A DNA stretch of 64,000 nucleotides from positions 13,082,001-13,146,000 of the forward strand of contig NC_087247.1 in the NCBI RefSeq assembly GCF_037042905.1. Direction: 5' to 3'. Below the pieces are notes generated by a model that was given only the letters and a program-made list of their open reading frames with translations, did not search any database and had not been told where the DNA came from. Every line of letters begins with the position of its first letter. Positions within the stretch are counted from its first letter, which is position 1. The DNA is from Lytechinus pictus (lineage: Eukaryota). Positions 2,020-63,518 of this stretch are shown here, piece by piece. A program made the position numbers and the translations under genes.

Positions 2020-2572
2020 AACATTCGGGTGTCATCGCACCTAATAATATTTTACAGTAAAATTAATTTTGATCTTGTGATGTGGAAGCAAACGTCCATT
2101 GGTAGGCAAAGTTCTCGAATGTAGATTGCTTTCCAAATTTTGCACGCCAAACAGAGACCTTAATCAATAACTCCGCAAAAAAACAAGACGTGAATTTCAT
2201 CTTTTGATTTATATGGATTGGTGCTTGTAGGATTTCACAAGGGTGAAAAGAGGAAAAGGGTCTTCGCAATTGATTATGGTCAAGGTGTCCCATTACAAAT
2301 ATTCAGTATGGCTCTAAAAAGGAGATGATCGATATCCACCCCCACCCCCGGATCCTCCGCAGGTTGTAGGTAGTCAGTCTAAATATAGTCGCAATTGAAT
2401 TTGTAAACAATCTAATATAGGCCTCGGCTTATGCCACAGCTTAAGTGACGAAAGGACACTATAGTACCTCATTTTTTGTAGCGATACAATAATTCAGATA
2501 ATCTATATTCCAACAGAATCGACCATCATTTACCAAAGATCTTAGCGAGTAACCGAGAAAACGGGGGCAATC

Positions 2573-3604
2573 ATGACTCATGGATATGGTTTGAAGCTGG
2601 CGACCTTGGTACTCTGCCTGCTTCACTTCACTCCACCCATCTACTCAGCCCCACTCTCCTCCTACTTGGTATCATTCTTTACTCCTCCTGATGCTGACTC
2701 CGACCTACCATTCAACCACATCACCATCAACAACATCACAGGAGATGTCTATATTGGAGCAAGGGAGAGACTCTATCAACTGAACTCAGACCTGACTCTC
2801 AAACACGCCGTAGATACCGGATCATGCCCTTCTCCAGATGAAGATAACACCGATAATAATAAGCTTCTAGTGGTAGCTCCATCACCTGAGGATAAACTCA
2901 TCACATGTGGTGGCTGTGATGGTTACTGTGAGACAAGAAGCTTTACTAATATATCACATGATGTAGTGAGATATGACTCTTCTGGTACTCAGCTTGTAGT
3001 GACCACATCAGATGCACCTATAGTTGGAGCTGTGGTGTTGGGTGCTGACTATCAAAGCAATGGTGTTGGTACTGCAGATGATGGATTGTACTTATTTACG
3101 GGGATCAGTGATGCGTCAGTGAGCTTACCATCTATCTCAAAGCACAATATTGATGACTTGAGTCACGGACAACGGGTGACAGAACCTCAAGCTTCTTTCC
3201 CACAAAATATTTTCAAACATTTGATACCTTACATGGAAAACCTCTACTATTTCATGTCTAGGGGAAACAATCAGAAGAGTGCATACTTGGGGCGACTGTG
3301 TCGTAATTCATTAGACGAAACATTGTCATCCTACACAGAGATACTTCTACAGTGTGGAACTTATAGTGAGATCCAATCAGGTAATATAGGAGCAACTGGA
3401 TCCCAGCTTGCTAATTCATTCAGCATGGAGAGTGCTGATGATCTTCTGTACGCTGTATTCGGAAGTGATAGTTCTTCTGCTCTATGCATCTATAAGATGA
3501 GCGATGTAGAGCAGAGCTTTGATGATGCTGCCAAGGGATGTAGCCAATCAGGAGATAACAGAGGAACAGAGAACAACTACCTTCAAGATAGTTCATGTAA
3601 TAGT
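2573..3604 (+). CDS. Variable exon V1: signal peptide + N-terminal part of the Sema domain (344 codons), intact
   Basis: ATG at 2573, hydrophobic leader, plexin Sema motifs (FNHITI..TGDVYIGARERLYQL, NKLLVV, LITCG, LGRLC, SYTEI.LQC, LYAVF, SALCIYKM). Phase-0 donor AGT|GTAAGT at 3604/3605; acceptor ttccaacag| at 2516/2517. Confidence 0.9.
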
Positions 3605-4349
3605 GTAAGTGTAAATGTCAAGTAAGCTGAAAATCTTTAAAATCATTCTTACCATAATTCTTGTTCTTAGTGTTATAAATTGAACATGTGGCTCCGGACA
3701 GTCAAAATGGTAGTTTGATCTCTTCAAAACGGAATGAGTTCAACTTTTCGGAATAGACCTATATGGTGCTTTTCTGTTACACTCTAGTCAGTAGCACCGA
3801 ATATATCTGCATATGGCAATTAGTTTGCCGTGTATTTCCATGAATGAACATATTTATGACGACAGAAATGCATAAATCTAAAATCGTGCATTCATTATTC
3901 ATTTATCATTCATTATTATTAGAATGTACTTGATTGGGTTAAATAATGACGATCCACAGTATTGTACGACGCAATGATGGAATCAACATGAAAAATCACA
4001 CAGTTTTCAAAAACTTGGCACTTGGATGTTCAGCGTAAAGTGGTTATCCGATTCACACTTTACGCTGCATTCAAGAGTTAAGTGTTTGGCGAGATTTGAC
4101 ATCTGAGAATTAGCCACTTTAAACAATCATTCCGTACCCAAACGCTGTATCAAGTGGTCACATTAAGTGATTATTTTCACAGGCAATTAACTCGTGATTA
4201 ATTTATCTACACCAGCTAAGAATAAGCCTCATCGTTTTTCTGAAATGTATATTGTATATCATTCCCCCCTTCATTTTTATTATAATTCAATTAGCTTGAT
4301 TTCATTCCTCGTTCTACAGAAGCTTTAAAATGCCATCGACTTGTCGTAA

Positions 4350-4672
4350 AAAATCTAAATTAAAATCTAAAAAAATCCTGGGGCGATCGAGCCTTTGCTC
4401 ATGCCGGACCAGCCCTGTGGAATTCACTACCACACGAGCTGAAGAACTCAAACTCTGTAACATCCTTTAAGGGCAACCTAAAATTGCATTTGTTCACCAG
4501 CAGGTACTAGATTTGATGACAGAAATCTTTCCTTATTTGTAATTTACCCTTTCTTGTACTTCTCTTATAGTTATCTTTACTTTTATGTTTTGCTCTCTTC
4601 TAAGCGCCTTGAGCATTTAATCAAAATGGAAAAGACGCTATATAAATCATATGTATTATCATTATTATTATT
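4350..4672 (+). mobile_element. LINE/SINE 3'-end fragment, shared with 8228-8551
   Basis: Ends gcgccttgagc...gacgctatataaat..(att)n. Present only in the spacers after V1 and V2. Confidence 0.55.
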
Positions 4673-5531
4673 ACATAAAAAGTAAATAGCGAAAATTAAT
4701 CTTATATCAACATGTTCAATGAACGGTACGTGCGCATGTGGATGTCGATTAACTAGCCATAATTCTTTCCTCAACAAAAGCATATACCATTTTCAATCAG
4801 GACTACCGAATTCAGAGCATTTTTTAATTTAAGCCAGAGACCATGAACACAAACATGTATCAATGGATGTTATTCATGTCCTTAGTGGTATAATCTCACT
4901 ACAAGTGCAGTGCAACAAAGGGACAGCGGGTGGTTGCCCTATGGGTTTCAAGTAAGAATAAAGGTGGGATACAATGGGACAAGAAGAGGCTGGTAAGAAA
5001 AAAAAAGTGTTGGAAATAGATGGCTTTGTCGTGAACTGCACTATCATGACTATAGACTTACCCGTACGAATACCTCCATTCCAGACATAAGACTAGTACC
5101 CGTTACAACAAAGTCTTGGTAACACCGCTTCATGATATATGAATATACAATTCCATATTTCTTGCCATGATCAATTATTCGTGTGATATATTGACAAATA
5201 TGGCAGCTCATAATCTCCTCTACGTTCCACTCATCGAAAGTTTGCCTCATTTTTATCAGGGTTCGGAAACACAGTAAAATATTTGCAGCTTTATTGGTGT
5301 GGAAAATGATTGCTAACAATAGGAAAATAAAACTTATCATTTTTGTTGTGATTCACGAAAGAAATACATTGAAACTTTCATTCTCGTTTGTTCTGTAAAA
5401 GTATAATTTTGCTGATTAAATTTCAATCCTTGCACGAGCTGCCATGGCCTTTTGTCTGGGAACAATAGGCCAAATCATCGACCCATCGTCCCAAAAAATA
5501 TTCATATATATATATTGAATTTCATTGCCAG

Positions 5532-5628
5532 ACTTCCTCATTCGCAGCACAGGTATCATTTATATTACTCGTTTCAATCAGCGAGTTGAAAGTAGAGACC
5601 GCGATTCCATCGTGAGAATAAGGTAAGG
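5532..5628 (+). promoter_or_regulatory. V2 conserved upstream element + leader donor
   Basis: ACTTCCTCATTCGCAGCACAGGTATCA; GAATAAG|gtaagg donor at 5623. Confidence 0.6.
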
Positions 5629-6406
5629 AACATTCGGGTGTCATTCATTGCTTAATATTTCTTGAAATTATTGAACTTTTTACTGAAATAAATTCATATT
5701 TTGTGATGTGGTAGCAAAGGTCCATTTATGTACTATGCTACGCGGGCAATGTCCCGGAAAAGGGTGGTGGGGGGGGGGGGTCTGTAGGATTCTGAGGTAC
5801 ACATTGTATGTACATGTACTTCCACTGTTATGTTCATTTAATGATACATACAATGATGATGCGTAGACCTATTTACAGCAACTTTCATTGAAGATCTAAA
5901 TCGAAAATATGTTGAAATTATTTTATACATATTACATTTCTTGATTTCAATTTGAACAATTTAATTCACATGATTGTACTTGACTAAAACTCAAATTAAA
6001 AGGACAAATTAATACAGTCAAGACGTATCGTTGTATGTTGTAAAAAAATACCATGGTCAATATCAGCTTGCTCACAAGTGGACAACACTTTTAAAATGTT
6101 GTCTTTATTGCTATCATTTGATTTTCCATAATTAGGATTGGATTAATGGCAAAATAATAATTTCGCAAATTATTCATGTATATCCGTGCTACAAATCATC
6201 TTTGAATCATCTGCTTGATGGTTGTAGGTATAGTCAGTGGTCGTATTGTCACCCCGGATTTTATTGTGCTCAAATATGTCTAGCTATGATGATGGTACCC
6301 AAGTATGACTGATGTAGTAAGTAATGAAGTTAATTCATATTCAAACAGGATCATCACCTACATTTACCAAAGATCTTGACGAATAACCGAGGAAACAAGG
6401 ACAATC

Positions 6407-7441
6407 ATGACTCAAGGATACGGTTCGAAGCTGGTGATCTTGGTGTGCCTGCTTCATTTCACTCAACCCATCTACTCAGCTCCACTCTCCTCCTACCTGG
6501 TATCATCCTTTACTCCTCCTGATGCTGACTCGGACTTACCATTCAACCACATCACTTTCAACAACATCACTGGAGATGTCTACATCGGAGCACGGGAGAG
6601 ACTCTATCAACTCAACACAGATCTGACACCGAAACACACCATAGATACTGGATCATGTCAACCAGATAAAAATGATATCATTAATACCAATAATATTAGG
6701 CTTCTGGTGGTAGCTCCATCACCTGAGGATATGCTCATCACATGCGGTGGGTGTGACGGTTTTTGTGAGACAAGGAGCTTGAATAATATATCACATGATG
6801 TAGTGAGATATGACTCTTCTGGTACTCAGTATGTGGTTACGAGATCAGATGCACCTGTAGTTGGAGCTGTAGTGTTGAGTGCGGACTACCAGGATGATGG
6901 AGTTGGTACTGCAGATGATGGATTGTACTTATTTACGGGGATCAGTGATGCAACACCAAACTTTCCATCTATATCAAAGCACAATATTGATGAATTGACT
7001 CATGGACAACGGGTGACAGCACCTCAAGCTTCTTCCCCACAAAACATTTTTAAACATTTGATCCCCTTCATGGAAAATCTCTACTATCTCATGTCTAGGG
7101 GAAACAGTCAGAAGAATGCATACTTGGGGCGACTGTGCCGTAATTCATTAGACGAAGCATTGTCATCCTACACAGAGATACTTCTACAGTGTGGAACTTA
7201 TAGTGAGATCCAGTCAGGTCTTATCGGAGAAGCAGGATCCCAGCTAGCTGATTCCTTCAGCTTGGAGAGTACTGACGATCTTCTGTATGCTGTATTTGGT
7301 AGTGATAGTTCATCTGCTCTTTGCATCTATAAGATGAGTGATGTAGAGCAGAGTTTTGACGGTGCTGCCAAGGGATGTAGCCAATCAGGAGATAACAGAG
7401 GAACAGAGAACAACTATCTTCAAGGTAGTTCATGTAATAGA
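6407..7441 (+). CDS. Variable exon V2 (345 codons), intact
   Basis: Paralog of V1. Acceptor tcaaacag| at 6348/6349; phase-0 donor AGA|GTAAGT at 7441/7442. Confidence 0.9.
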
Positions 7442-9481: not shown

Positions 9482-9572
9482 ACTTCCTCATTTGCAGCAC
9501 TGGTATCAATTATATTACTCTCTTCAAGAGAGACCGCGATGCCTTCGTCATGTTCGTGGGAATAAGGTAAGG
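9482..9572 (+). promoter_or_regulatory. V3 conserved upstream element + leader donor
   Basis: ACTTCCTCATTTGCAGCACTGGTATCA; gtaagg donor at 9567. Confidence 0.55.
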
Positions 9573-10045
9573 AACATTCGGGTATCATTCATTGCTTAAT
9601 ATTTGAACTTTTTACTGATATGAATTTAGATCTTGTGATGTGGTAGCAAAGGTCCATTATGAACTATGTTACGAGGGCAACGTCCTGGAAGGGGGGGGGG
9701 GTCTGTAGGATTCTGAGGTACAATATGTATACAAATATTTACTTCCAATTTTATATTTATTTAATGTTGCATACAATGATTTTGCGTTGGCCTATTCACA
9801 GCCACTATCATTGAAGATCTCATTCTAAGATAGGGCTTATATCGAAATGATTTTATAAATATTACATTTCTACACTTTAATTTGAACAATTCAATTCACA
9901 TGATTGTACTTGATTAAAGATCCAATTGAAATGACAAATTGATACAGTCAACGATTACCGGTGTATGTTGTAAAAAAAATACCATGATCAATATTTGCTT
10001 GCTCACTAGTGGAAAACACTTTTAAGGGGTTGTCTTTATTGCTTT

Positions 10046-11269
10046 CATCACCAGAGATGTCTATATTGGTGCACGAGAGAGACTCTAGCTATCAACTCAA
10101 CTCAGAGCTGTCTCTCAAACACACTGTAGATACCGGATCGTGTCGTTCTCCAAATGAAGACAATACCAATAACAATAGACTTCTGGTGGTAGCTCCATTA
10201 CCTGAGGATAAACTCATCACATGTGGTGGCTGTGATGGTTTCTGCGAGACAAGGAGCTTGACTAATATATCACATGATGTAGTGAGACATGACTCTCTTG
10301 ATACTCAGCGAGTGGTTACGACATCAGATGCAGCTATTGTTGGAACTGTGGTGTTGGGTGCAGACTACCAGGATGATGAAGTTGGTAATGCAGATGGTGG
10401 ATTGCACTTATTTACTGGGATCAGTGATGCCTCAATTACCATTCGTTCTCAAAGAGAAATCTTATTGACCTAAGCTATGGGCAAGAGGTAACACATCCTC
10501 AAACCTCGTCCCGACAAAACGTTTTCAAAATGTTAATCCCTTACATGGAAAACCTCTACTATTTAATGTCTAGGGGAAACATTCAGAAGAGTGCATACTT
10601 GGGGCGACTTTGCCGTAATTCATTAGACGAAGATTTTGCGTCCTACACAGAGATACAACTACAGTGTGGATCTCACAATGAGATCCAGTCAGGTCATATA
10701 GGAGCAGCAGGATCCCAGCTAGCTGATTCCTTCAGCTTGGAGAGTACTGACGATCTTCTGTATGCTGTTTTCGGAAGTGATGTTTCATCTGCTCTTTGCA
10801 TCTATAAGATGAGTGATATAGAGCACAGTTTTGACGATGCTGCCAAGGGATGTAGCCAATCAGGAGATAACAGAGGAACAGAGAACAACTATCTTTGATA
10901 TTTGTGGATTACTTGTTTTAAGTTTGTATTCTGTGTCCGTCTCGAATTTTGTATAGAGTTGTATATATAGTTTGTTTATAATTAGCATTGAAACTAACTT
11001 TAGGGGCTTGCCTTCTCTACAAGCTTTTGCTTTTCTTGGCAAGTCCCTCCGTTCATTTCTTGTTTCTTTTCATTGATAATATTAATGCAACAAATTGTAG
11101 TTTTGTTTAATTTATATTCAACATTTGTTACGAAATTTCATTGATTTGTCTGTATTATCGATTATATTGAATATGTACTGTTACTTTGATTATATTTTGA
11201 AAAAATTGTTGAACGGAAATAAAATCTAAATCAAAAAATCTAAATCTTCAAGGTAGTACATGTAATAGA
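10046..11269 (+). pseudogene. Variable exon V3, pseudo-exon
   Basis: Acceptor, ATG and signal peptide are deleted (intron sequence fused to catcaccagagatgtctat). Frameshifts split it into ORFs 10009-10473 and 10530-10898. There is an insertion at 10896-11243. The GTAAGT donor is retained at 11270. Confidence 0.88.
10896..11243 (+). mobile_element. 5'-truncated non-LTR retroelement 3' end inserted in V3
   Basis: Flanked by ATCTT duplication; ends with AATAAA and an (AAATCT)n-like tail. Confidence 0.6.
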
Positions 11270-21298: not shown

Positions 21299-21301
21299 TA
21301 A

Positions 21302-23037: not shown

Positions 23038-23116
23038 TTCCTCATTTGCAACACAGGTATCATTCGCTTTTCTGTTCAAGTCGAGACAGTGATGCCTACG
23101 TCTGAATAAGGTCAGG
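23038..23116 (+). promoter_or_regulatory. V4 conserved upstream element + leader donor
   Basis: TTCCTCATTTGCAACACAGGTATCA; GAATAAG|gtcagg donor at 23111. Confidence 0.55.
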
Positions 23117-23833
23117 AACATTCGGGTGTCATTACACCTAATATTATTGAAATCATTGTACTTATTTTACTGTAAAATGAATTTTGATCTTGTGGTGTGG
23201 AAGCAAAAGTCCATTGGTGGGCAAAGTTCTCGAACAGTTGAATGTATAGATTACTTTCGGAATTTTGCACGCCAAACAGAGTCCTTAATCAATAACTCCG
23301 CAAAAACAAAACGTGAATTTCATCTTTTGATTTATAGGGATTGGTGCTTGTAGGATTTCACAGGGGTGATATTTTGCTTAAAAAACTCCAACAAGCAAAA
23401 GAAAATAAAAACTAAGAAGAAGGTATTCGTTCCAGAAGGGAGGAGAACTATGTCACGAAAAGTTTTACAGCACCCCCTCCCCCCAAAAAAAAAAAATTGA
23501 AAAAAAAAGAGAAAAAGGGTCTTCACATTTGATTATGGTCAACGTGTCCCATTACAAATATTTATTATGGCTCTAAAAAGGGGGATGATCGATATCCACC
23601 ATTACCCCCGGATCCGCCGCAGGTTGTAGGTAGTCAGTCTAAATATAGTGGCCATTGAACTTTTAAACCATCTAATATAGGGGCTTCGACTTATGCCACA
23701 GCTTACGTGACGAAAGGACATATATTACCTCAATTTTTGTACCGATACAATAATCCAGATAATTTATATTCCAACAGAATTGACCATCATTTACCAAAGA
23801 TCTTAGCGAGTAACCGAGAAAACGGGGGCAATC

Positions 23834-32729: not shown

Positions 32730-32809
32730 TTCCTCATTTGCAACACAGGTATCATTCTTATTTCTGTATTCAGTCCTGACCGCGATGCCTTCGTCAGAAT
32801 AAGGTAAGG
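32730..32809 (+). promoter_or_regulatory. V6 conserved upstream element + leader donor
   Basis: TTCCTCATTTGCAACACAGGTATCA; GAATAAG|gtaagg donor at 32804. Confidence 0.55.
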
Positions 32810-40051: not shown

Positions 40052-40270
40052 GTTTATAGCATAGAACCGCCCGATTCAGTTCTATGTACAGCGTATCTAA
40101 TATTAGATGGTACTGGGTATCTGTACTACCAGTATGCCAGTGGAGTGAATGCCCTTCCTGCATCACTCGTCATCCCTCTTGGTGCTGCATCTCCCACCTC
40201 AATAGTAACAACCATAGAGAGACAACATACCATTGCATGCATAGGAGATACACAAGGAAACCTTCAAAAG
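40052..40270 (+). CDS. Constant exon C1b (tandem paralog of C1a, VYSIEPPDSVLC...GDTQGNLQK), phase 0-0
   Basis: ccttgcag| acceptor, AAG|gttagg donor, 73 codons, open. Differs from C1a at 16 of 73 aligned positions. Confidence 0.88.
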
Positions 40271-43065: not shown

Positions 43066-43181
43066 GTTCTTAAACTAAATTTGGCAAACTGTGGCCAATA
43101 CCAAACCTGTGATGAGTGCATTGGTGGCAATGGAGGAAACGATGGAGACCCTTACTGTGGATGGTGTACTTTAGAAAAAAG
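43066..43181 (+). CDS. Constant exon C3 (PSI1: NCGQYQTCDECIG...DPYCGWCTLEKR)
   Basis: Classic PSI motif DPYCGWC. tacag| ... AG|gtgaga, phase 0-2. Confidence 0.92.
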
Positions 43182-49292: not shown

Positions 49293-49422
49293 GTGCACAA
49301 GGTATGAGGCATGCGATCTGCCTGAGCAACCATCAAGATGGTTATCATACAATGCTTTACAGTGTGTTTCCATCTCTGATGTACAGCCAGATAATCTTCC
49401 TTATGATGTAACGGACCAACAG
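49293..49422 (+). CDS. Constant exon C4 (CTRYEACDLPEQPSRWLSYNALQCVSISDVQPDNLPYDVTDQQ)
   Basis: tcaag| ... CAG|gtattt, phase 2-0. Completes PSI1. Confidence 0.85.
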
Positions 49423-51305
49423 GTATTTTACATTCATATTTCATTCTCTTCCCTATCTTTAAGGGTTTATTTTCAGTTGGTCTAATGCCAATTCTTTTAA
49501 TCACCAACTCACCTACTGTTATTTGGTCTACCATCAGTTCATCCACAATCCTCATGATCTTATATTGCAGTTTTGTCCACTCACCTTTTCGTCTAATAAC
49601 CAGTTGGTCCAATAGCCATTTAGTCAATATTCTGTTTGGTCTAATTGGAATAAGTTTTAATTGAAAATAAAATGGATATTAGATCGACGGATTATGAGAC
49701 GATATAGTCATAGGCAAACTAGTGATTAGACGAAGTGATGATTGGATCAATTGGTTATTAGACCAAATGGTGGTTAGACGAAATGTTGATGGATGGAATG
49801 GCATTAGAATATAGACCATGAGATGAGTGGACAAGTTGGCAATAGATAAAGTGGCAATTTACCTCTTTTTCCAATAATTAAATGCTTGGTAGAATTATAT
49901 TGAACACTCTTGCCCGGATATCTCAGCTACAAGTGGATGAAAACACTTGAAATCATGTAGGCACTTAAGAATAATATTGATGGGTCTAGTGGTGGGTGCA
50001 GGACATCATAAAACTGGGATCAGAGAAATTGGGCAGATTTCTTCATCATTTTCTTCAAATCATGAAGAAGCGCCACCCCCCCAAAAAAAAATCAGTTCAG
50101 TTGGAATAATTGATGAACATGACGAAAACCTCTATTTGAGAACACTATCCCCTGTTTCCCTCTTCATCAATTCTCTTCTCCAAGTACGACAAACCCTAAC
50201 TGCCCCCAAGCAAGCAATTTAAGTATCAAAACACCTGTTTCTTGACCTCGGTCCAAAGATAACACAACAGCCCGGCAAATACAGTCACAGCAGGGGGCCA
50301 CACACGATTGGATGCATGCGCAGCGCTGAGCGCGGTCCCTGCAAAGCATGCCGTCATTTTTATTCGCTTACTTTCCTTATTTCGAGGTCGATTTTCTTCA
50401 TTCGAAATTGAAAATGGACTAACATTGGATTTCTGAATACAATATGCCTTTGAAACGTGATTAAATATCGAATACAATAATTTCATTCTGAAGGTCCTAC
50501 TACAGGCAGAGAAGTCTTTCGTAATAGCATAGCTGTTGTTTATCATTTCGTCCTTGGCTCAACGCTCATATACTGGCCTGTGGAGGTGAAATTGAGACAG
50601 CGGGGATTACCTGGCCAAGCAGGGTTGATCAGGGCTTGGAAATGATTTTTGGGATTTCCAAACGTAAAATGGGGTATAAAACCGCAGTTTGCAATCTGAA
50701 CTGCTGTCTTTCTCCAAACGGGGGTTTGACGTAATGAATAATAAAAAGAAGTCAAAAGAAACCCCTTTCTCACATAATCGAAGCATTTGTCTTTAAATAA
50801 ATAACACATTGAAATACAAGTTTTTCATTCTCCAACAAGACAAAATTGGTTCCAAAAGGGAAATTCTGACAATTAAGCCCCTGCCTGCATAATTCTGTGA
50901 TACAAAACTTAGTGAAATACTTTGGGTAACATTAAGTGGTTTTAAAACATAATTTTGTTCCAAAAGGTTCTTTGTGATATATATAAATCTCTTTAGATCC
51001 TCTAATTCCTCCCTCCAGAAGCTAACATTATATTATATCAATATATTACTCTGTTCTAATTATGATATAATATTCAAGTACCAAAGAACAGATATCAACT
51101 GTATTTCAAACTGAAGTAACTGTTAGTTTTGTGTGTTTCTATTTACCAATTAACTTAAGTGAGTTGTATAACTGTATACCATTATTGATACATCAAGGAC
51201 TACAATACAATACAATACATAATGGGTAAACAATATTCAAAATATTTACAGATGAGTGTATATGACTACACTAAAAATGAGACCATATGAGAGTTGGAGG
51301 TACGT

Positions 51306-52738
51306 CCTGGGGGGGCCACTTACATTGACGAGTGGAAACCATGCGCAACCCAAAAAACATGTAAAAAGGATGTCTTTTTCAAGATAAGGCATGTTACGTA
51401 CGTAACGTAATAAGGGTGTCAAAAATACTAAAATAGTGAAAAAAGGGTATCTATTTCGTTAGGAAAGTTACGTGATTAGGGTCAAATTTGCGAGGGTCAT
51501 GAAAAATACGAGACATTTGGCTTTCTCCTGCTCGTACGCACGAGCGTCCGTCGATATAACACATGGTATTTCTATTAAAATATGCACCCTTTTTCTTAAA
51601 AGTTGATGGAGAGGGGGAAAAATTAATCGTATCAAGTCGGGGAATTCAGTAATGAGGACAGGAAAACTATATTTCACTGATTTGTATGATTCATCCCATT
51701 TGATTAACTCATCTAATCGTGTTTTGGGGCTAATCTTTCCCTTACGCATTGCTTTTTGACAGAAGTTCTATGGAAAATGCACCTTTTTTCACACAAACTT
51801 TGAGACACTCTGTATTCGTTTCCCCATTACTCGAGAATAAATGGGCAGTTAACGATGGGGTGAAAGATTTATTGAAGAACAGAATGTATATTTCACGAAA
51901 ATGAAAACCATGTCCCCATTGGATGTTATCTTCAATACGTGTTTTTTAGATAAAGTTAGTTGTCAAATCGGCTCTCCTGGCATTTGAGGTCTCTATCGGT
52001 GACGTCACTCAGGGTCGTCATGCCTGAACCATCGGCTGGGCAGGGGTCGAAATGGTAGTATAATCCACGCATAATGCACTGGATATAGACAATAATCTTG
52101 TCCTCTCGTTCAAATGAATGTGTAACTCATACAATTTTTATAAGAGCATTCAACATGAGCACTGTAGTGATTATTTCTTTGTTATAAGTGAATGAAAGTC
52201 CCTCCATTCGAGTTTGATCACCCCTATCGTGAAAATATATATCACTCCCCAAGTTGTAACACAGTCAGCTGTTAGCACTCAGGGTCACTCCGTGACCTGT
52301 GTGTGCATTCAAGAGTTGTACACGATTTTCTGTCTCATTTAGGCAGAAATCTTTCATAATGAAAAGACTAAAATGTTTTATAAAGGATGTACTTTTTAGC
52401 CCAACAATCAATACTACGTCAATTATAGAGTCTGACTTTGCGCGAGGTGTGGGAGGTGGGGCCGTACTAAACCCAATGATGTAGGTAAAGGTAAAACCGA
52501 CGTCTGTGACATATAACAATTAAGATATCGCTGTACTTGTTTAGGGGTTCAATTCAGGGAATACTTGCCAAGTGAATTTTTTTATTTCCAATACTTGTTA
52601 AGGGTAGGGTTTCACACACCAATACTTGTTAAGGGGTGCATTTTCAGAATATGGAAAATACGTGTTTAGGGTGCTTTTCGGGACCCCATGGTCGCGCATG
52701 GTATCCACTCAATGGAAGTGCCCCCCCCCCCCCCCCGG
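51306..52738. mobile_element. G-run-terminated DNA element (Mutator-like); a truncated relative lies at ~43856-44425
   Basis: Ends CCTGGGGGGGCCACTT / AAGTGCCCC..CCGG, (G)AGGTACGT TSD. Body shared with 43856-44425. Confidence 0.6.
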
Positions 52739-52811
52739 AGGTACGTAGACAATCAAATATTCCTGACCTGTATAAATTTGAGTTCTGTCTTGACTTGCAA
52801 TTTCCTATTAG

Positions 52812-52940
52812 ATTACAATAAAAGGTACAACAGCTCCCAGAGCCTAGGGACATAATTCATTTGTGTGATTATACTTCTACTACTACCTGTTATGCTCTCA
52901 TCTGTATATCTCCTGCAAACAAACTACCTTTAATTCCAGA
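52812..52940 (+). pseudogene. Decayed tandem duplicate of exon C5
   Basis: ag|attacaataaaaggtacaacagctccca...ctctcatctgtatatctcctgcaaacaaactacc matches C5 (ag|attaccataacagtacaacagctccca...ctctcacctgcacatctcctcctgcaaacgaagtacc) with indels and no donor. Confidence 0.75.
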
Positions 52941-52982
52941 AGAATTATCATTTTAATGTACCTTTTTTGTTTAATTGTTAAG

Positions 52983-53136
52983 ATTACCATAACAGTACAA
53001 CAGCTCCCACGTCTTACGGACAGCTTTCAATACAGGTGTGCCTTTGGTACCTATGAGGTCGATGCTGCTACATCTGGTGATACTCTCACCTGCACATCTC
53101 CTCCTGCAAACGAAGTACCTCCAATTCCTGCTGGAT
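52983..53136 (+). CDS. Constant exon C5 (IPT/TIG1: ITITVQQLPRLTDSFQYRCAFG...LTCTSPPANEVPPIPAG)
   Basis: gttaag| ... T|gtaagt, phase 0-1. Plexin TIG1 pattern LP...Y.C.F...C.SP. Confidence 0.88.
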
Positions 53137-56359: not shown

Positions 56360-56459
56360 CATACTTTGTGTCAGTGGATCTGTCTATTGTGTCAACTGAA
56401 ACAAAGGTCAAATTTGTGGCCACAGATTTCTCCTTCTTTGGGTGCAGTCTCATCAAATC
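56360..56459 (+). CDS. Constant exon C6 (SYFVSVDLSIVSTETKVKFVATDFSFFGCSLIKS)
   Basis: tttctag| ... TC|gtaagt, phase 1-2. Confidence 0.86.
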
Positions 56460-57643
56460 GTAAGTGCTTGGTTTTTATACCGTAAATAATGTTATATTTC
56501 ATGTAATTAATATCTTCTGCTATGAGAAATGATTAGGGCTGAGTCATTACATGTTTTATTTGATAAGTCACTGCTCCTGATATTTTGGCATAAACCTGTG
56601 GACCACTAAAATAAAGAAAAACATTAGAAATTCATTGCCACCAAAGACTATGAATATCAACCACTGTAAGGCCTATATTTTTTTAAATACTGTTTTGTAC
56701 TATTATTTCATTTATTTTGATATATTATTTCATATTTTAATTAGATGTTTATTTCTTGTTTGCACTGGTATTGGAGATGATGGGAATATGCTTGTTAAAA
56801 GCAATTATTACATCTGATATTATGCATTTGGTATCACCTGTGCCTGGGAGGCAAAAAGCGAACTGAAATCACTCTGACCCGCAGGTCTCTCTTCCCGATA
56901 TATCTGACTGGGGGAGTGCAGGTTTCCCCCTACTCTTATATGAATAGTGCAGTGGGTTCTTAATGTGCAAAGGTGGTGACTCTTCTATACACAGGGCCTC
57001 CATTTAACGTCCTATCCGAGGGACAGAGTGTTTTCCACTGTAACAAAGTTCATGTTGAATTCTGCAGTTTTCCTCACTAGAACATTTCCCATTTCTAATG
57101 TACATGGAGGCCTAAGATGAAGAATTCATTGGAGTGGTGATTAGCAGACATGCATCAAAATGCAAATAAAAGGTCTTTGCAAAAAACATATCTAAATCAA
57201 ACTGAAATTATATAAATTACAGTCATTGCAAACTTGAACTCTGACATAGCCAATTAAAAAAGTTTTGAAGTAGTTATCCTTTGACGTCTGGTGGAGGCCC
57301 CAACCTTGATTGTGTCTATCTGACTTTTGCACATATTTTTTTTTTCACATATTAATTAGATCTAAACTCAGCAAGTTTGTTGGAAAGTTCATGACATTGA
57401 GGAACGTCCTCAAAATGTTGAAATGTGGAGCACATAACATTTCCTCCAGTCAAGCTTATCATTTTACTCCCTACCATTAAAAAATTTTTTTTTAGTAAGA
57501 CAGGTGATGTCCTCAGACTATTTTGATTGCTATTCTCCTTTACGGTTGTGGATAGAAGCAAAATCCCTTTCAATTTATAGTCATGTTGCTTTGAAATATA
57601 TATTCTTTTAAAAATGAAACAATTTTTTGGTACATATATTCAG

Positions 57644-57761
57644 ATGTTCAGCCTGTGTGACAGTTGACTTTCCATGTGACTGGTGTGTGTATGACAACAA
57701 GTGTACAGACGATAGCAGCTCAGAATGTCAGGCAGGAGATACAGTTATCATTGGAGATAAT
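57644..57761 (+). CDS. Constant exon C7 (PSI2: CSACVTVDFPCDWCVYDNKCTDD...)
   Basis: attcag| ... AAT|gtaagc, phase 2-0. C..CV....PC.WC....KCT motif. Confidence 0.9.
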
Positions 57762-57870
57762 GTAAGCAGATGATGAGATTATATGCATTGTATAATTTTG
57801 TAACAGACTATGCTCAGGATTGTTTATGTTTATAATATATGTACACTGGAAAAAGAAACTATTCTCTTAA

Positions 57871-58473
57871 AGGTAAAGTCCACCCCAGAAGAAATTTGAT
57901 TTTAATAAATAGAGAAAAATCAAACTAGCATAATGCTGAAAATTTGATCAAAATCGGATGTAAAATAAGAAAGTTATGACAATTTCAAAGTTTCGCTTAT
58001 TTTTAACAAAATAGTTATATGAACGAGCCAGTTACATCCAAATGAGAGAGTCGATGATGTCATTCACTCACTATTTCTTTTGTTTTTTATTGTTTGAATT
58101 ATACAATATTTCAATTTTTACGAATTTGATGATTAGGACCTCCTGCCTGAAGCACAAAATGTTAAAATAATGGAATTCCACGTGTTCAGGGAGGAATAAA
58201 ACTTCATTTCACATGACAATGACGAGAAAATCCAAATATTTCATATTTCATATAATAAAATACAAAAGATATAGTGAGTGAATGACGTCATCAGTCTCCT
58301 CATTTGCATACCGACCAGGATGTGCATATAACTGTTTTGTGAAATTAAGCGAAACTTTAAAATATCATAACTTCCTTATTTTACATCCGATTTTGATGAA
58401 ATTTTCAGTGTTATGTTTGTTGGATTTTTCTCTTTTTATTCAAGTCAACTTATTGTTGGGGTGGACTTGTCCT
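57871..58473. mobile_element. Kolobok-like MITE, copy 2
   Basis: TTAA TSD, TIR AGG..AAGTCCACCCC. Confidence 0.78.
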
Positions 58474-59267
58474 TTAACTTTCCTCTAAACTTAATTTTCA
58501 TAGCAATAGATTATTACAGTATGATATTGTTTTTTATCACTTTCTTATCTGAGGGTGGTATACAGTGTATTTACAATCTGTATTTGTGTTGAATGGTTTA
58601 AGATGGTTTCCATATCATTTTGAAAATGTATAGGTTAAATTTTGCATATCCAATAAAATTTGCCACACTTTGATTTGTGTTATGAAACATTTGAATATAA
58701 AGTCTGTGTACCTAACTAGTTGTGGTTTATATGAAAAGACTGTGGGGATGATGACTGGCCTTTTATCACTTGCATATTATTTGCTCAAAGAATAAATTTA
58801 TTTGAAGTACCCAGGTTTTGGAATCATTGTCCAACGAAATAACTAACTGTTTATCCTTAAGTACATTAAAGTGTAAATTAAAATCCTTTTTTTTATCCAG
58901 CTATATGGACTCGGTTTAGACGCACTGGCTGAACACTGAATTTGCGTTGTACCTTTTTATACTTTCCCTCTCATTCTTTACCCCGCGATTTCTTAATATA
59001 CACTTAATCTGGCTCTTCCTATGTAGTCTGAACTTTTTGTAAGTGTCTGATCTCCTTGATAATTTCATAATTAGATTAAAGGAACCTGTAGACATTACAA
59101 GCTCTGTTTTTTATGCAGGTTCCTTCATATTTCACTTTCATTATCATAATCTTCTGTATTTTGTATATAATCAAATGTATTTCTTGTATATTGTGTTATT
59201 ATATTTTGTTATATATTTTGTGAAGTATGAAAATAAATTCAATACAATGTTTTAAAATTCATTGTAG

Positions 59268-59405
59268 AATCATGTTGGTAGTGGAAATCGAGGACAGGAA
59301 TTTTGTCCCCAGCTGCTTGGAGCAACTGAATCCTTTCTGATCCCAGTCAACATTCCTTCCCGTTTCTCACTGTCTGCAAAGAATCTTCCTACAGATCCAT
59401 CTCAG
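59268..59405 (+). CDS. Constant exon C8 (NHVGSGNRGQEFCPQLLGATESFLIPVNIPSRFSLSAKNLPTDPSQ)
   Basis: ttgtag| ... CAG|gtaatt, phase 0-0. Plexin CPQL...LIP....AKNLP motif. Confidence 0.9.
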
Positions 59406-59974
59406 GTAATTGTATTTGTGACTTGAAAATATAGTAAGATTTATTCTTATATTTTCATCTATATCTTGGTATATATTTTTCATAGCACACATAATTCTTC
59501 ACAATTTTCTATGCTATTGCAAATGGGTACAATATGTGCATTCTTATTTTATAGAAACAATAACAAAATGATACCAGACTGCAGTGCAGATAAAAACTCC
59601 TATAACATAATTAGAATTGTTGATTTGCAGAACTTCTCAATATTTATGAAAATATTTTTCAAATAATGTTCTCCTTAACTCTTCTTTTCCAAAGACAAGT
59701 GATAATTGAATGTTCTTTGATCTCAGACAGAGCCGTTGTGGATGCAAGTGTGTGTTTGTGTATAAAATTAGCTGCTACAATTTCATTAGGTGTGTGTGTG
59801 TAATTGCATAATACAGACGTGTATCAATCAGATATGATTATTCACGTCTGGAACCTATCTTTAACGCCACCATCCGAAAGACGTGACCAGAACTTCCTCC
59901 ATGTAGAGCTTGAATTACAGGCATAAGCCTCTTCACCCAGTTTTCTTGACTAAATTGTTTTCATATTTTTCCAG

Positions 59975-60076
59975 GGCCTACAAAGATATGAGTGCATCCT
60001 TGACATTGAAGGAGAAGAAGTGAGAGTAGCCAGTGCTGAATTTACTGAAACCTACATCCTCTGTAATGATAAGGAG
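59975..60076 (+). CDS. Constant exon C9 (GLQRYECILDIEGEEVRVASAEFTETYILCNDKE)
   Basis: ttccag| ... GAG|gtaaca, phase 0-0. YECIL.I.G motif. Confidence 0.88.
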
Positions 60077-60635
60077 GTAACAACAAGACTTAATAATCAT
60101 TATCTAATGCGAATATAGTAAAATTTGTTACACTTAATAATAAATCTGTTGGTATTTGTTTGTATTCATTTTTTTGTATTCCAGTATTTAAATTTTCACC
60201 CCTATCTATTTACATTTATCTTGAAGTTTGAGTGCTTATAAATACTGATTCAAGTTTGAAAAAATAGTTATTTGATCTTGAAAAATAATCATATTGAAGA
60301 ACATTTCACCACATAACGATACTGGTTGTGTTGACCATACAAAGTGAGAATCATTGATGTCTTTAATTCACTTAACAATTCTAGTGCGAGCATATTAGAT
60401 TTCTTTTATCCCAAATAACTTTGAAATCTATAATCTCTAGAAGGTCAGATTTGAGATTTATTGATGTCTTTATTATTCAATAACAATTCTAGCAAGCATA
60501 TTAGATTTCTTTTATCTCAAATAACTTGGAAATCTATAATCTCTAGGTAAGATTTGAGATGTTCACATTTCCTGTAAGTAGAATTGCAAAGTTGACCACC
60601 GTTGAATTGAAAAATTATGTTGCTATCTCTTTTAA

Positions 60636-61232
60636 AGGTCAAGTCCACCCCAACAAAATGTTGATTTGAATAAATAGAGAAAAATCAAACTAGCATAACA
60701 CTGAAAATTTCATCAAAATCGGATATAAAATAAGAAAGTTATGGCATTTAAAAGTTTCACTTATTTTTCACAAAAACGTGATATGCACATCTCAGTGACA
60801 TGCAAATGAGACAGTCGATGATGTCCATCACTCACTATTTCTTTTGTTTTTTATTGTTTGAATTATACAATATTTCATTTTTTACAGATTTGACAATAAG
60901 GACCAACTTGACTAAACCATATATTATTAAAACAATGCTAATTCCACATGTTCAGGGAGGAATTACTCTTTGTTTCACTTGACAATGAGGAGAAAGTTAG
61001 AATATTTCATATAATGAAATACAAAAGAAATAGTGAGTGGATGACGTCATCAGTTTACTCATTTGCATACCGACCAAGATGTACATATAACTGTTTTGTG
61101 AAATTAAGCAAAACTTTAAAATGTCATAACTTTCTTATTTTACATCCGATTTTGATGAAATTTTCAGTGTTAGGCTTGTTGGACTTTTCTCTATTTATTC
61201 AAATCAACTAATGGTTGGGGTGGACTTGTCCT
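60636..61232. mobile_element. Kolobok-like MITE, copy 3
   Basis: TTAA TSD, same TIR. Confidence 0.78.
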
Positions 61233-61272
61233 TTAAATAACATTTTGCATAATCTGTATTAACTTATTTCAG

Positions 61273-61366
61273 TATATTTACGATGAGAATGCCATTCAGA
61301 AGAACATCAGTGTCTCCGTAAAGTGGAATGGGCAGAACACAATCGATGACCATTCAGATTCATTTG
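61273..61366 (+). CDS. Constant exon C10 (YIYDENAIQKNISVSVKWNGQNTIDDHSDSF)
   Basis: tttcag| ... G|gtaaga, phase 0-1. Plexin 'V.WNG...ID' motif. Confidence 0.88.
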
Positions 61367-61584
61367 GTAAGATATAGAAATATATGGAAAAATCATGGTA
61401 TATGCACAAAATACCAATAACTGTTTAATATGTGAATAGTATTAAGTTGATTAAAGTCTTTAGTATAGGCCTAACTCAATCATGATACAAATAACAATTT
61501 GAATTCAACAACCCCCCCCCCCCTAGAAAATGAACAATATTAACTAAAAAAATATCTCTATTTTTTTTTCTATTTCTTTTACAG

Positions 61585-61775
61585 TCACTCTTTATAAGTG
61601 TTCTATTAATGGTGGAAGTTGCAGTCGATGTCTTTCCCAAGAAGCTACCCCATCTGTCTTGAACTGTGGTTGGTGCGGTGATGACTGCAATGTCATTCAG
61701 AGTGATGTTTGCCAGAATAATGGGTTTCTCCATCAGAATGAGACGCAGCAATGTCCATCACCAGTTATTACCAAG
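61585..61775 (+). CDS. Constant exon C11 (PSI3: VTLYKCSINGGSCSRCLS...NCGWCGDDC...QCPSPVITK)
   Basis: ttacag| ... AAG|gttaga, phase 1-0. LYKC...SC..CL...CGWC...CP.P.IT motif. Confidence 0.92.
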
Positions 61776-62334
61776 GTTAGAGGAGTATTGTTCACACAGA
61801 TTATAAGGCTCATGAAGTAGTTCAGAATTGCTGCAGTTCACTACTATTTTTGTTTTCATGTGGCGAAAATCACCCTGCATTTGTTTACTCGCTGTACAAA
61901 CCCAAAGTCTTGTAAAGAGAGAGATGAAGAATCACCCAAGGACAATTGAAAGCTTGATAGAACCTGATGTTAGGTCTTATTTTTGGCCCAAAGTATTACT
62001 GCAGCATATCCAACCAAGCCTTGATGCATTGGAATATTTTATACATACCTGCCCTGTAGACAGGGTTTTCAATTAGGGGGTGTAATCCCTTCTCTCTTCC
62101 CTTTTCTTATTCTTTTCATCTCCTATTTTGACAATTTCAGGGGGTTCGATTGAACCCTGAACTTTGGGCATACTTACAATTTTGGGGGTTGTTTTTTAAT
62201 TCTCGATACTATTAATATTATTAAATATAAACAGTATTCATTTTTCGTATCATAGACATAAAGAATCAAATATGTTATTCCAAACAAACATTCTCAACTT
62301 TTTAATTATTTCTTTTGATTTTGTTTCCTTCAAG

Positions 62335-62489
62335 TTCAACCCAATGTCAGGTCCAATTGGTGGGCGTACCAGGTTAGAAGTCATCGGAACTGATATAGGA
62401 GTGGTATTTGAGGATGTTCTCCAAATTCATATTCAAGACTTGGAATGCGATAAGACTGACATGGATGAATATTACCAGGCAGGACAGAG
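62335..62489 (+). CDS. Constant exon C12 (IPT3: FNPMSGPIGGRTRLEVIGTDIG...)
   Basis: ttcaag| ... AG|gtaaat, phase 0-2. IPT signature P.SGP..G.T...I.G. Confidence 0.9.
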
Positions 62490-62539
62490 GTAAATCTCAT
62501 GTTTTACTCTCTACTTTTTCCCTTTTCCATTACTCTATA

Positions 62540-62760
62540 GTGGGCGTTGTGGCCCAGTGGATTAGCCTCAGGACTTTCAAACAAAGGGTCGTGGGTTCAA
62601 ATCCCAGCCATGGCTTGGTTTCCTTCAGCAAGGTGAGGTACCTGGTAGGAATTAATGCCTTCAAATGTGTGTGCACGGTAAGTAATTGAGGCCTCCAAGC
62701 CAAAGCCAGGGTGATAACATCCATGTCCTTTCGAAGCACATAGAGATGTTATATTCAAAT
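62540..62760 (+). mobile_element. Degenerate copy of the same tRNA-SINE head family
   Basis: gtgggcgttgtggcccagtggattag...gggttcaaatcccagccatggc matches the head at 13587. Confidence 0.7.
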
Positions 62761-63403
62761 AACAAAATAAATCTGAAAGTTAATGCTTTCTTTCTTTCCA
62801 ATCAAATGTTTATTCAAAGTTTGATACTCACATTTTTGACGTCCCCTACATTGTCATCAGGAGTAAATGACAATGATTAGATCAATCATAATAAAATGTT
62901 TTGAATAAACATTTGATTGGCAAAAAAAGCATTAACTTTTAGATTGGTGTTTTTTTATGTATTACTGAGGTTATGAAGATTTGAATCAGTGATAGGATAC
63001 ACCATCACATGATCATAGCTGTAAGAATCGCATTTCTCGGTTTAGAAATCACCTCAGTGAATATAACTGCATTTTATTGTAAACTGCTACTTTATATTGC
63101 AAGGAGGTGACGTCACCCACTGCTTATAAGTAATCAGGTAGATTTATTGGGATTGCTCTGAGGAACTTTTGATTTTAATAGGCTCCTCCTATTTATTTTC
63201 TTCCCCCCCCCCCCATTTATATGAATAAAGATAGATGTAAACTGAAATGTATGGATTTTTTTCTTTACTTTTACTTTTCTCAATGGTGCATCAGGCCTTC
63301 TAAATGGATAAGAAAGGCAATGAAGTCAAAGAACTTTAACTGTGTGATGAAAATGAGCTGTATTTGTCTCATTACACTCAATGTTTTTGTGTTTGTTTTC
63401 CAG

Positions 63404-63518
63404 TGTAAGTTGCATGACAAGTATATCTACTGAAGTATTATCAGAACCCATTGGAATCACTGTGATGTCAGGTAATGGAAATAAGACTGGGCAAAGCACT
63501 CAAGATTTTCAGTACAGG
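63404..63518 (+). CDS. Constant exon C13 (SVSCMTSISTEVLSEPIGITVMSGNGNKTGQSTQDFQYR)
   Basis: ttccag| ... AGG|gtaagt, phase 2-0. Ends in the IPT 'F.Y' motif. Confidence 0.87.

What the first reader, a model, noticed from the sequence alone, without database searches (positions are those of the whole stretch)
2517..63518. Plexin gene with a clustered variable-exon / constant-region architecture (protocadherin/UGT1A/sDscam-like receptor diversification)
Seen: six tandem ~1.03-kb paralogous exons encode signal peptide plus most of a Sema domain, and all stop at the same phase-0 donor after C-N-(S/R). None is followed by its own downstream exons. One set of downstream exons starts in phase 0 at 39781/40052 and completes Sema-PSI-IPT-PSI-IPT-PSI-IPT with all phases matching. 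Established: vertebrate Pcdh-alpha/gamma, UGT1A and chelicerate sDscam use variable 5' cassettes spliced to common exons; the Sema domain is the ligand-binding part of plexins, and canonical plexins have one Sema-coding region per gene. Inference: one locus makes a receptor repertoire with swappable Sema domains on a common body (at least 3-4 V x 2 C1 = 6-8 isoforms in this window), possibly for self/non-self, immune or neural recognition. I do not know of this layout being described for plexins but cannot search the literature.
Basis: partly seen in the sequence, partly recalled or inferred. Interest (0 to 1): 0.96.

Follow-up and report, generated by a model that had tools for sequence, protein, structure and literature searches.

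The report
Sea urchin plexin with alternative Sema cassettes
One plexin receptor gene of the sea urchin Lytechinus pictus has seven tandem copies of its promoter, leader exon and Sema-domain exon in front of a single receptor body; at least three copies are intact, conserved and transcribed, so the gene probably makes several receptors with different ligand-binding heads, which has not been described for plexins.

Summary
The window (Lytechinus pictus, C3:13082001-13146000) has six ~3.8-kb tandem units, each with a promoter-like block, a short leader exon and a ~1.03-kb exon (V) coding a signal peptide plus about five of the seven Sema blades. A seventh, broken unit lies 0.3-1.4 kb upstream of the window. 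V1, V2 and V5 are intact. V4 has a single 1-nt deletion. V0, V3 and V6 are dead.

Only one receptor body follows: a tandem exon pair C1a/C1b 55 nt apart, then 33 more exons ending about 20 kb past the window. An NCBI model, XP_063952485.1, maps exactly as V5-C1a-body.

- Intact V exons show dN/dS 0.22-0.32 at dS about 0.33.
- V lineages are shared with L. variegatus, which also has several V units before one body.
- S. purpuratus relatives have one V per body.
- Spliced RNA contigs show V1 and V2 are transcribed. V2 is spliced from its own leader exon. V1 coverage stops at its donor.

No read joining V1 or V2 to C1 could be obtained, so multi-V use is probable (about 0.6), not proven. Unlike protocadherin or UGT1A variable exons, these V exons carry acceptors. 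The body lacks all three GAP arginines. Two L. pictus annotations share the body (99.6%) but no V copy above 88%. I rate it a new variant of a known kind.

The parts
1940..2013 (+). V1 leader exon (non-coding) with promoter-like block just upstream (CCAAT-type motif ~1886)
   Evidence: Conserved motif and donor AAG|GTAAGG found upstream of all six V exons; exon ends inferred by homology to the V2 leader seen in RNA.
2517..3604 (+). V1 exon: 56-nt 5'UTR, ATG 2573, signal peptide plus about five Sema blades; intact; donor AGT|GTAAGT, phase 0
   Evidence: RNA contigs cover 2588-3603 and nothing in 3604-3769. dN/dS 0.22-0.32 against the other V exons of this array.
5533..5622 (+). V2 leader exon, seen in RNA
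   Evidence: An X1 contig joins 5533-5620 to 6347-6512 across a GT..AG intron of 726 nt.
6349..7441 (+). V2 exon (ATG 6407), intact, donor AGA|GTAAGT, phase 0
   Evidence: (contigs over 6347-7146 listed; depth to about 7441-7485, none in 7513-7700).
9484..10895 (+). V3 unit: leader-like block 9484-9566 and dead V copy 10009-10895 (5' deletions, frameshifts, donor lost)
23038..23110 (+). V4 leader exon (by homology)
23778..24864 (+). V4 exon (ATG 23834): open except for one 1-nt deletion at 24172 (GGTGG to GGGG); donor intact
   Evidence: dN/dS 0.29 against its L. variegatus orthologue, so the lesion is recent or an error.
26786..26903 (+). V5 leader exon and core promoter
   Evidence: An island of 89-91% identity to the L. 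variegatus orthologous unit, within 44-70% flanks; motifs.
27505..28594 (+). V5 exon (ATG 27560), intact; canonical donor AGT|GTGAGT at 28594. The NCBI model uses GTTGAT six nt later (28600)
   Evidence: The X1 run holds 0.54 of its sampled words.
32730..34976 (+). V6 unit: leader-like block 32730-32803 and dead V copy 33553-34976 (1-nt insertion at 34185, 409-nt MITE at 34397-34805); donor still intact
39781..39996 (+). C1a: first constant exon (216 nt, phase 0 to 0), next part of the Sema propeller; strong acceptor
   Evidence: used in NCBI model P0192.
40052..40270 (+). C1b: tandem paralogue of C1a (219 nt, phase 0 to 0), 55 nt after the C1a donor; intact splice sites; skipped in P0192, included in the older model P0210
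42378..42515 (+). C2: last Sema blade
   Evidence: structure model.
43066..43181 (+). PSI1 exon
49293..53136 (+). Two exons (49293-49422 and 52983-53136): end of PSI1 and IPT1
56360..63518 (+). Eight further ectodomain exons (56360-56459, 57644-57761, 59268-59405, 59975-60076, 61273-61366, 61585-61775, 62335-62489, 63404-63518): IPT1, PSI2, IPT2, PSI3, start of IPT3. The gene runs on past the window to a stop at window-equivalent 83811
   Evidence: Exact reconstruction of P0192 with GT-AG introns. Pfam families recorded for P0192. TM and cytoplasmic exons downstream.

Best explanation
This is a Lytechinus-specific tandem amplification of the 5' module of one plexin gene. The module holds a promoter, a ~75-120-nt leader exon and a 1.03-kb exon that codes the signal peptide, the N-terminal closing strand and about five of the seven Sema blades.

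Proposed mechanism:
1. Each intact module (V1, V2, V5; V4 where its frameshift is absent) fires from its own promoter.
2. The leader exon is spliced to its own V exon.
3. The shared phase-0 V donor is then spliced over the downstream, weak-acceptor V exons to the strong acceptor of C1a or C1b.
4. C1a and C1b lie 55 nt apart and are probably mutually exclusive.
5. Splicing continues into one common body: the rest of the Sema domain, PSI/IPT repeats, a TM segment and a plexin cytoplasmic domain that has lost all three GAP arginines.

The outcome would be a small set of receptors that differ in most of the Sema head but share stalk and tail.

Shown: the architecture; integrity and purifying selection of V1, V2 and V5; a separate promoter and leader exon for V2 in RNA; transcription of V1 and V2, with V1 coverage ending at its donor; conservation of the layout in L. 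variegatus.

Inferred: the joining of V1, V2 and V4 to C1, the skipping of downstream V exons, and C1a/C1b exclusivity.
For: - Seven V copies but only one C1a/C1b pair and one body at this locus. Every other gene of the family in the genome (about 20 on C17, plus the gene just upstream) has one V and one C1.
- P0192 maps exactly as V5-C1a-body.
- V alone cannot close the propeller. In the model (pLDDT 86, pTM 0.87; TM 0.73-0.78 to solved plexin Sema-PSI) about 11 strands come from C1 and C2.
- dN/dS is 0.22-0.32 at dS 0.32-0.46 among V1, V2, V4 and V5, and 0.29-0.38 against L. variegatus orthologues.
- The tree pairs V5, V4 and V3 with copies in other Lytechinus annotations at 95-99% support.
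- A promoter and leader block lies upstream of every V. For V5 it forms a conserved island between species.
- The X1 contigs behave as RNA: a spliced leader-to-V2 joint, exon-only coverage, and V1 depth ending at 3603. X1 also holds 0.54 of the V5 words.
- V acceptors have 45-65% pyrimidine against 85% for C1a and C1b.
- L. variegatus has at least four V copies (two open) before one body.
Against: - No read or contig joining any V donor to C1 was seen. I had one read-laying run limited to 6 kb, and contigs break at exon ends.
- The V5-C1a join rests on a Gnomon model that uses an odd GTTGAT donor.
- Every V exon has a used or usable acceptor. A V1 pre-mRNA could splice V1 to V2, which is out of frame because of the 58-nt UTR. 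I found no docking or selector complementarity that would enforce skipping.
- Three deep rRNA-depleted RNA-seq runs show almost no reads on V1 and V2.
- NCBI annotates V1 and V2 as separate 350-aa read-through ORFs. It does the same for the V exon of the single-V neighbouring gene in L. variegatus, so that split is uninformative.
- Four of the seven copies are broken.
Confidence: 0.6

Rival explanations
1. Only the proximal intact cassette (V5) makes the receptor. V1 and V2 are transcribed and conserved for another reason. They may splice to an unrecognised terminal exon and give short secreted proteins, or feed regulatory or NMD transcripts through V-to-V splicing.
For: The only full-length model uses V5. 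V exons carry acceptors, and V1-to-V2 splicing is formally possible. No V1 or V2 to C1 junction was seen.
Against: A V-only product lacks two to three propeller blades. Purifying selection at dS of about 0.33 on V1 and V2 requires a translated, folded product. The contig across the V2 acceptor shows only leader-to-V2, not V1-to-V2. No coverage follows the V1 donor, so there is no read-through 3' end.
Confidence: 0.25
2. The array is a neutral, decaying by-product of unequal crossing-over. The transcripts are noise from duplicated promoters and the open frames survive by chance.
For: Four of seven copies are broken. S. purpuratus manages with one V per gene. No window of the exon has dN/dS above 0.45, so there is no sign of diversifying selection.
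Against: Three 344-codon frames have stayed open at dS of about 0.33, with dN/dS 0.22-0.31. V lineages are retained across species. The V5 promoter and leader are conserved between species within unalignable flanks.
Confidence: 0.1
3. The array is an assembly artefact: collapsed or expanded haplotypes stitched in tandem.
For: Sea urchin genomes are highly heterozygous. The older L. pictus annotation holds a different set of V proteins.
Against: The copies differ by 12-20% and carry different lesions and TE insertions. RNA contigs from another study match V1 and V2 individually. L. variegatus shows the same layout. There are no N runs in the window.
Confidence: 0.03

Closest known systems
Clustered protocadherin alpha/gamma and UGT1A loci (multiple variable first exons spliced to common exons)
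   Same: A tandem array of paralogous large 5' coding exons, each with its own promoter, upstream of one set of constant exons. The variable part codes the recognition or substrate-binding region. Evolution is by birth and death, with pseudo-exons in the array.
   Different: Here each cassette is two exons (leader plus V), so V exons have 3' splice sites and downstream V exons must be skipped. The array is small (3-4 usable V exons) and genus-specific. The split falls inside one folded domain, the Sema propeller, rather than between domains. V-to-constant splicing is not yet shown.
Chelicerate sDscam (tandem 5' cassettes chosen by alternative promoters; PMC9258826)
   Same: An invertebrate cell-surface receptor diversified by 5' cassettes with their own promoters on a common body.
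   Different: It belongs to a different protein family (Ig/FNIII). sDscam has 50-100 isoforms with RNA-pairing-assisted trans-splicing. I found no pairing elements here.
Echinoderm plexin-B expansion (PMC6374515, which cites Whittaker et al. 2006 for S. purpuratus)
   Same: This gene belongs to the echinoderm-expanded, plexin-B-like group. The genome holds about 20 more tandem whole genes on C17.
   Different: The published expansion is by whole-gene duplication. Amplifying only the Sema-exon module in front of one body is not mentioned in the papers I could search.
Mutually exclusive tandem exon pairs (for example alpha-tropomyosin exons 2/3; from memory)
   Same: C1a and C1b are homologous, of nearly equal length (216 and 219 nt), both phase 0 to 0. 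They are separated by only 55 nt, with the likely branch point about 33 nt from the C1a donor.
   Different: Exclusivity is untested. One NCBI model skips C1b and an older one includes both.

Membership tests
Plexin | N-terminal seven-bladed Sema domain | tested here: met
   Pfam PF01403 on V exons. PDB sequence match to Plexin-B1 Sema-PSI, E 4.5e-31. AlphaFold model pLDDT 86; Foldseek TM 0.73-0.78 to Plexin A, A2 and B1.
Plexin | PSI and IPT/TIG repeats, a single TM segment, and a cytoplasmic Plexin_cytopl domain with RBD | tested here: met
   P0192 carries PF01437, PF17960, PF18020, PF01833, PF24479, PF08337 and PF20170 and maps exactly onto the locus. The TM segment and cytoplasmic exons lie downstream of the window.
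Plexin | Catalytic GAP arginines (the LRR(T/S)E pair and the LPLRFW arginine) | tested here: not met
   In an alignment with canonical plexins, P0192 reads FINTET and CLS-NFW at these motifs. Which motifs are catalytic is from memory.
Variable-first-exon / constant-exon cluster (Pcdh, UGT1A, sDscam type) | Tandem paralogous variable exons upstream of a single set of constant exons | tested here: met
Variable-first-exon / constant-exon cluster (Pcdh, UGT1A, sDscam type) | Each variable exon has its own promoter | tested here: met
   A conserved promoter and leader block lies upstream of all six V exons. An RNA contig starts at the V2 block and splices into V2. The V5 block is a conserved island between species. 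TSS use by V1, V4 and V5 was not seen directly.
Variable-first-exon / constant-exon cluster (Pcdh, UGT1A, sDscam type) | The variable exon is the first exon and has only a 5' splice site | tested here: not met
   V2 is entered through an acceptor at 6347/6348 from a leader exon. Homologous CAG acceptors precede V1, V4, V5 and V6.
Variable-first-exon / constant-exon cluster (Pcdh, UGT1A, sDscam type) | Every variable exon is cis-spliced to the first constant exon | tested here: inconclusive
   V1 coverage stops at its donor. V2 coverage stops within about 45 nt of its donor. V5-C1a exists only as an NCBI model. No junction read was obtained.
Mutually exclusive exon pair (C1a/C1b) | Homologous exons of the same phase with intact splice sites, exactly one included per mRNA | tested here: inconclusive
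   Homology, phase and splice sites are met. There are no RNA data on inclusion. The models disagree: P0192 has C1a only, P0210 has both.

The most novel reading that the evidence does not exclude
The V array together with C1a is a long-lived, highly polymorphic haplotype block. Different L. pictus individuals would carry largely different sets of Sema cassettes, some closer to L. variegatus cassettes than to any in the other haplotype, on an almost identical signalling-dead plexin body. That is the genetic signature expected of an individual-specific recognition system, such as allorecognition, immune or gamete/larval recognition. In such a system isoform choice and haplotype content together would define identity.
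Probability: 0.15. Interest if true: 0.9.

Novelty: new variant of a known kind. Interest (0 to 1): 0.68.

Why it matters
Plexins are treated as one-gene, one-Sema-domain receptors, and their diversity is thought to arise by whole-gene duplication. This locus would show a second route: swapping most of the ligand-binding propeller by promoter choice and splicing, with the splice point inside a single folded domain. It would add a deuterostome invertebrate example to the short list of variable/constant receptor clusters.

It also raises a splicing problem those clusters do not have, because the downstream variable exons carry acceptors and must be skipped.

The body has lost its GAP arginines. 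Echinoderms have expanded secreted semaphorins (PMC6374515). Together these suggest a binding or scaffolding role rather than classical Rap-GAP signalling.

L. pictus is a laboratory species, so junction RNA-seq, single-cell V choice and deletion of individual cassettes are all feasible.

Tried and rejected
- A search of the 5.8-billion-protein set with the C1a exon, hoping for RNA-contig peptides across V|C1, found no candidates.
- The S. purpuratus isoforms X1 and X2 of the related gene differ only by an N-terminal extension, not by V exon. The S. purpuratus genes are canonical, with one V per C1.
- A search for docking or selector-type complementarity between the introns after V1, V2, V4 and V5 and the intron before C1a gave only chance matches of 12-17 nt.
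- Sliding-window dN/dS found no window above 0.45. There are variable patches, with dN up to 0.22 around aligned codons 181-225, but no evidence of positive selection.
- The rRNA-depleted RNA-seq runs X21-X23 were nearly empty on V1 and V2. They show low expression in those samples, not splicing.
- The ~350-aa 'plexin-B2-like' database proteins are V exons read through the donor into a stop. I rejected them as evidence for stand-alone genes, because the same split is made for the single-V neighbouring gene.
- Whittaker et al. 2006 (PMC3565218) is not held in the library.
- Four literature searches found no description of this layout. A fifth returned only papers on the known variable/constant-exon clusters.


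Full report
**Source of the window.** The window is G000:C3:13082001-13146000. The protein P0192 (XP_063952485.1, 'plexin-B1-like [Lytechinus pictus]', 1857 aa) lies on a contig of 82,431,108 bases, the length of the window's chromosome. It is reproduced exactly from the window plus 20 kb of downstream sequence. The genome is therefore L. pictus.

**The observation.**
- tblastn with V1 finds six copies in the window. A whole-genome search adds a seventh, V0, 0.3-1.4 kb upstream of the window.
- V1 (2573-3604), V2 (6407-7441) and V5 (27560-28594) are open.
- V4 is open except for one 1-nt deletion at 24172.
- V3 has several deletions and has lost its 3' end and donor.
- V6 has a 1-nt insertion and a 409-nt MITE with terminal inverted repeats.
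- V0 has a 2-nt insertion and a stop.
- Five copies end in phase 0 at CN(S/R) followed by GTAAGT or GTGAGT.
- The duplicated unit is about 3.8 kb and includes the spacers.

**Constant exons.**
- The only C1-type exons at the locus are C1a (39781-39996) and C1b (40052-40270), a 274-nt tandem duplication.
- They are followed by single exons for the last Sema blade, PSI1, IPT1, PSI2, IPT2, PSI3 and IPT3. Beyond the window come further IPT exons, a TM segment and the cytoplasmic domain.
- In all there are 35 GT-AG coding exons, ending at window-equivalent 83811.
- P0192 uses V5, then C1a, and skips C1b. Its V5 donor is a weak GTTGAT six nt after the canonical GTGAGT. This may be a homology-driven modelling choice.

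**Genomic context.**
- The family is large. About 20 copies on C17 are spaced 60-100 kb apart, each with its own C1 and cytoplasmic exons.
- Directly upstream on C3 lies a complete sister gene, with V at 13021125, C1 at 13024942 and cytoplasmic exons near 13.06 Mb.
- Only the window's gene has V multiplied without the body.
- The related S. purpuratus cluster has canonical genes with one V and one C1.
- In L. variegatus the corresponding gene has an open V (P0004), a broken V, a V modelled as P0011 (no stop in my extraction of it) and a 3' V fragment before its body model.
- The L. variegatus sister gene has one V and one C1.
- NCBI splits V from the body even in that single-V gene. The many ~350-aa 'plexin-B2-like' entries, which end CN(S/R)-VSVNVK-stop, are therefore read-through ORFs and not evidence of separate genes.

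**Is each V functional?**
- Among V1, V2, V4 (frameshift masked) and V5, dN/dS is 0.22-0.32 at dS 0.32-0.46.
- Against L. variegatus orthologues, V5 gives 0.38 at dS 0.21 and V4 gives 0.29 at dS 0.25.
- Three 344-codon frames staying open at this divergence, with this ratio, implies translation into a constrained protein.
- A tree of V proteins pairs V5 with L. variegatus P0011 (support 98), V4 with P0004 (99) and dead V3 with an intact L. pictus protein from the older annotation (95).
- The lineages therefore predate the species split and evolve by birth and death.
- V alone cannot fold. In the AlphaFold model of residues 1-520 (pLDDT 86, pTM 0.87) the V exon ends at about residue 345, and about 11 further propeller strands come from C1 and C2.
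- The model matches solved plexin Sema-PSI structures at TM 0.73-0.78. The best PDB sequence match is Plexin-B1.

**Promoters and RNA.**
- Every unit has a conserved block about 500-900 nt before the ATG. The block holds a CCAAT-type motif, a TTCCTCATTTGC-type motif and a leader-exon donor AAG|GTAAGGAACATTCG. The CCAAT-type motif was not found upstream of V3.
- Between the L. pictus V5 unit and its L. variegatus orthologue this block is an island of 89-91% identity in flanks of 44-70%.
- I laid four runs on 1800-7700.
- The contigs of run X1 behave as RNA. One contig joins 5533-5620 to 6347-6512 across a GT..AG intron. Coverage is confined to V1 (2588-3603), the V2 leader exon and V2, apart from a repeat at 4361-4754.
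- The depth in bin 3573-3769 equals what the one contig ending at 3603 contributes. So nothing follows the V1 donor.
- That 322-nt contig has four letters beyond 3603 that did not align to the genome. A junction would produce this, but the evidence is weak.
- V2 depth ends between 7441 and about 7485 and is zero from 7513.
- X1 also holds 0.54 of the sampled V5 words, while two runs of the same study hold 0.01-0.02. That pattern is what regulated RNA would give.
- Three 2026 rRNA-depleted runs show no reads on V1 and a few on V2. Their first mates lie on the minus strand, which fits a plus-strand RNA if the library is of the usual stranded kind.
- So V1, V2 and probably V5 are transcribed in one sample. 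V2 is transcribed from its own promoter. Transcripts do not read through the V1 donor.
- The joints to C1 lie outside the 6-kb limit of my single read-laying run and remain unseen.

**Differences from Pcdh and UGT1A.**
- V exons are second exons with acceptors: V2 starts at 6349, V1 at 2517, V4 at 23778 and V5 at 27505.
- A V1 donor joined to the V2 acceptor would be out of frame, because of the 58-nt UTR.
- Productive use of a distal V needs all downstream V exons to be skipped.
- The V acceptors have poor pyrimidine tracts (45-65%) against 85% for C1a and C1b. This could bias the choice, but that is inference.
- I found no intron complementarity of the Dscam or sDscam type.

**C1a and C1b.**
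- They are 85% identical in DNA (dN 0.13, dS 0.30). Both are phase 0 to 0 with good splice sites.
- The 55-nt spacer puts the likely branch point about 33 nt from the C1a donor.
- Including both would duplicate part of a blade, so mutual exclusion is likely but untested.

**Further findings.**
- The body lacks the three GAP arginines. It reads FINTET where canonical plexins have LRR(T/S)E, and CLS-NFW where they have LPLRFW. Some sister genes keep the RR pair. This confirms the scan note s1-317528.
- In the unit 1 against unit 2 comparison, the spacer just after the exon is 94-98% identical while the exons are 81-94% (mean 88%). This points to a mosaic history, such as gene conversion of spacers with the exons staying apart.
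- The older L. pictus annotation (XP_0547... proteins) shares the body at 99.6% over 1438 aa and C1b at 100%. Its C1a-type exon is only 79% identical.
- None of its eight V-type sequences is more than 88% identical to any V copy in this genome. A direct genome search with its proximal V finds at best 81% over a full-length copy, and 86% over the V3 fragment.
- This suggests deeply different V/C1a haplotypes within the species. It rests on annotation proteins only.

**Verdict.** The architecture is real and unusual for a plexin, and it is conserved within Lytechinus. Several lines support function of at least three cassettes. The defining splice joints are unproven, and the analogy to classical variable-first-exon clusters holds only in part. 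No paper in the searchable library describes this layout.

Noticed in passing
window 2573-39996 compared with proteins P0210, P0002, P0003, P0006-P0009: Two L. pictus annotations share the plexin body at 99.6% and C1b at 100%. C1a is only 79% identical. No V protein of the older annotation is more than 88% identical to any V copy in this genome. The V array plus C1a may be a deeply diverged haplotype block whose boundary lies in the 55 nt between C1a and C1b.
   Followed up: partly
window-equivalent 74073-83092 (cytoplasmic exons, downstream of the window; loci L034-L035): The plexin body has lost all three GAP arginines (FINTET for LRR(T/S)E; CLS-NFW for LPLRFW). Some sister genes of the echinoid expansion keep the RR pair, but all those aligned lack the third arginine.
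   Followed up: yes
window 3567-4722 versus 7442-8605: The spacer just 3' of V1 and of V2 is 94-98% identical, while the exons themselves are 81-94% identical. The units therefore have a mosaic history, probably spacer homogenisation with the exons kept apart.
   Followed up: partly
window 4361-4754: A repeat inside the V1-V2 spacer is very abundant in all four RNA runs (word depth up to about 400 in X1). Reads run off into unrelated sequence, so it is an expressed multicopy element.
   Followed up: no
window 15760-16917 (+) and 18382-18873 (-): An intact 385-aa PIF/Harbinger-type DDE transposase ORF (PF13359, E 4e-32) sits in the 13-kb gap between V3 and V4. Beside it is a 163-aa ORF with no Pfam hit and a GC-rich stretch (18-22 kb, GC 0.47-0.52).
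   Followed up: partly
window 53411-56165: A 39-nt minisatellite of 70.6 copies (94% matches) lies in the intron between the IPT1 exons. It creates a spurious 836-aa ORF.
   Followed up: yes
window 37528-38084: A 133-nt tandem repeat (4.2 copies) lies in the intron between V6 and C1a, next to a low-complexity K/E/R-coding stretch at 38880-39160.
   Followed up: no
G000:C17:17.12-18.52 Mb: About 20 complete plexin genes of the same family lie in tandem at 60-100 kb spacing, each with one V and one C1. One copy (18172366 / 18182007) seems split by about 10 kb.
   Followed up: partly
window 28594-28600 and homologous sites after V1, V2 and V4: There are tandem candidate donors 6 nt apart (GTAAGT then GTAAAT; in V5, GTGAGT then GTTGAT). 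The NCBI model uses the second, weaker one in V5, which adds Val-Ser.
   Followed up: partly
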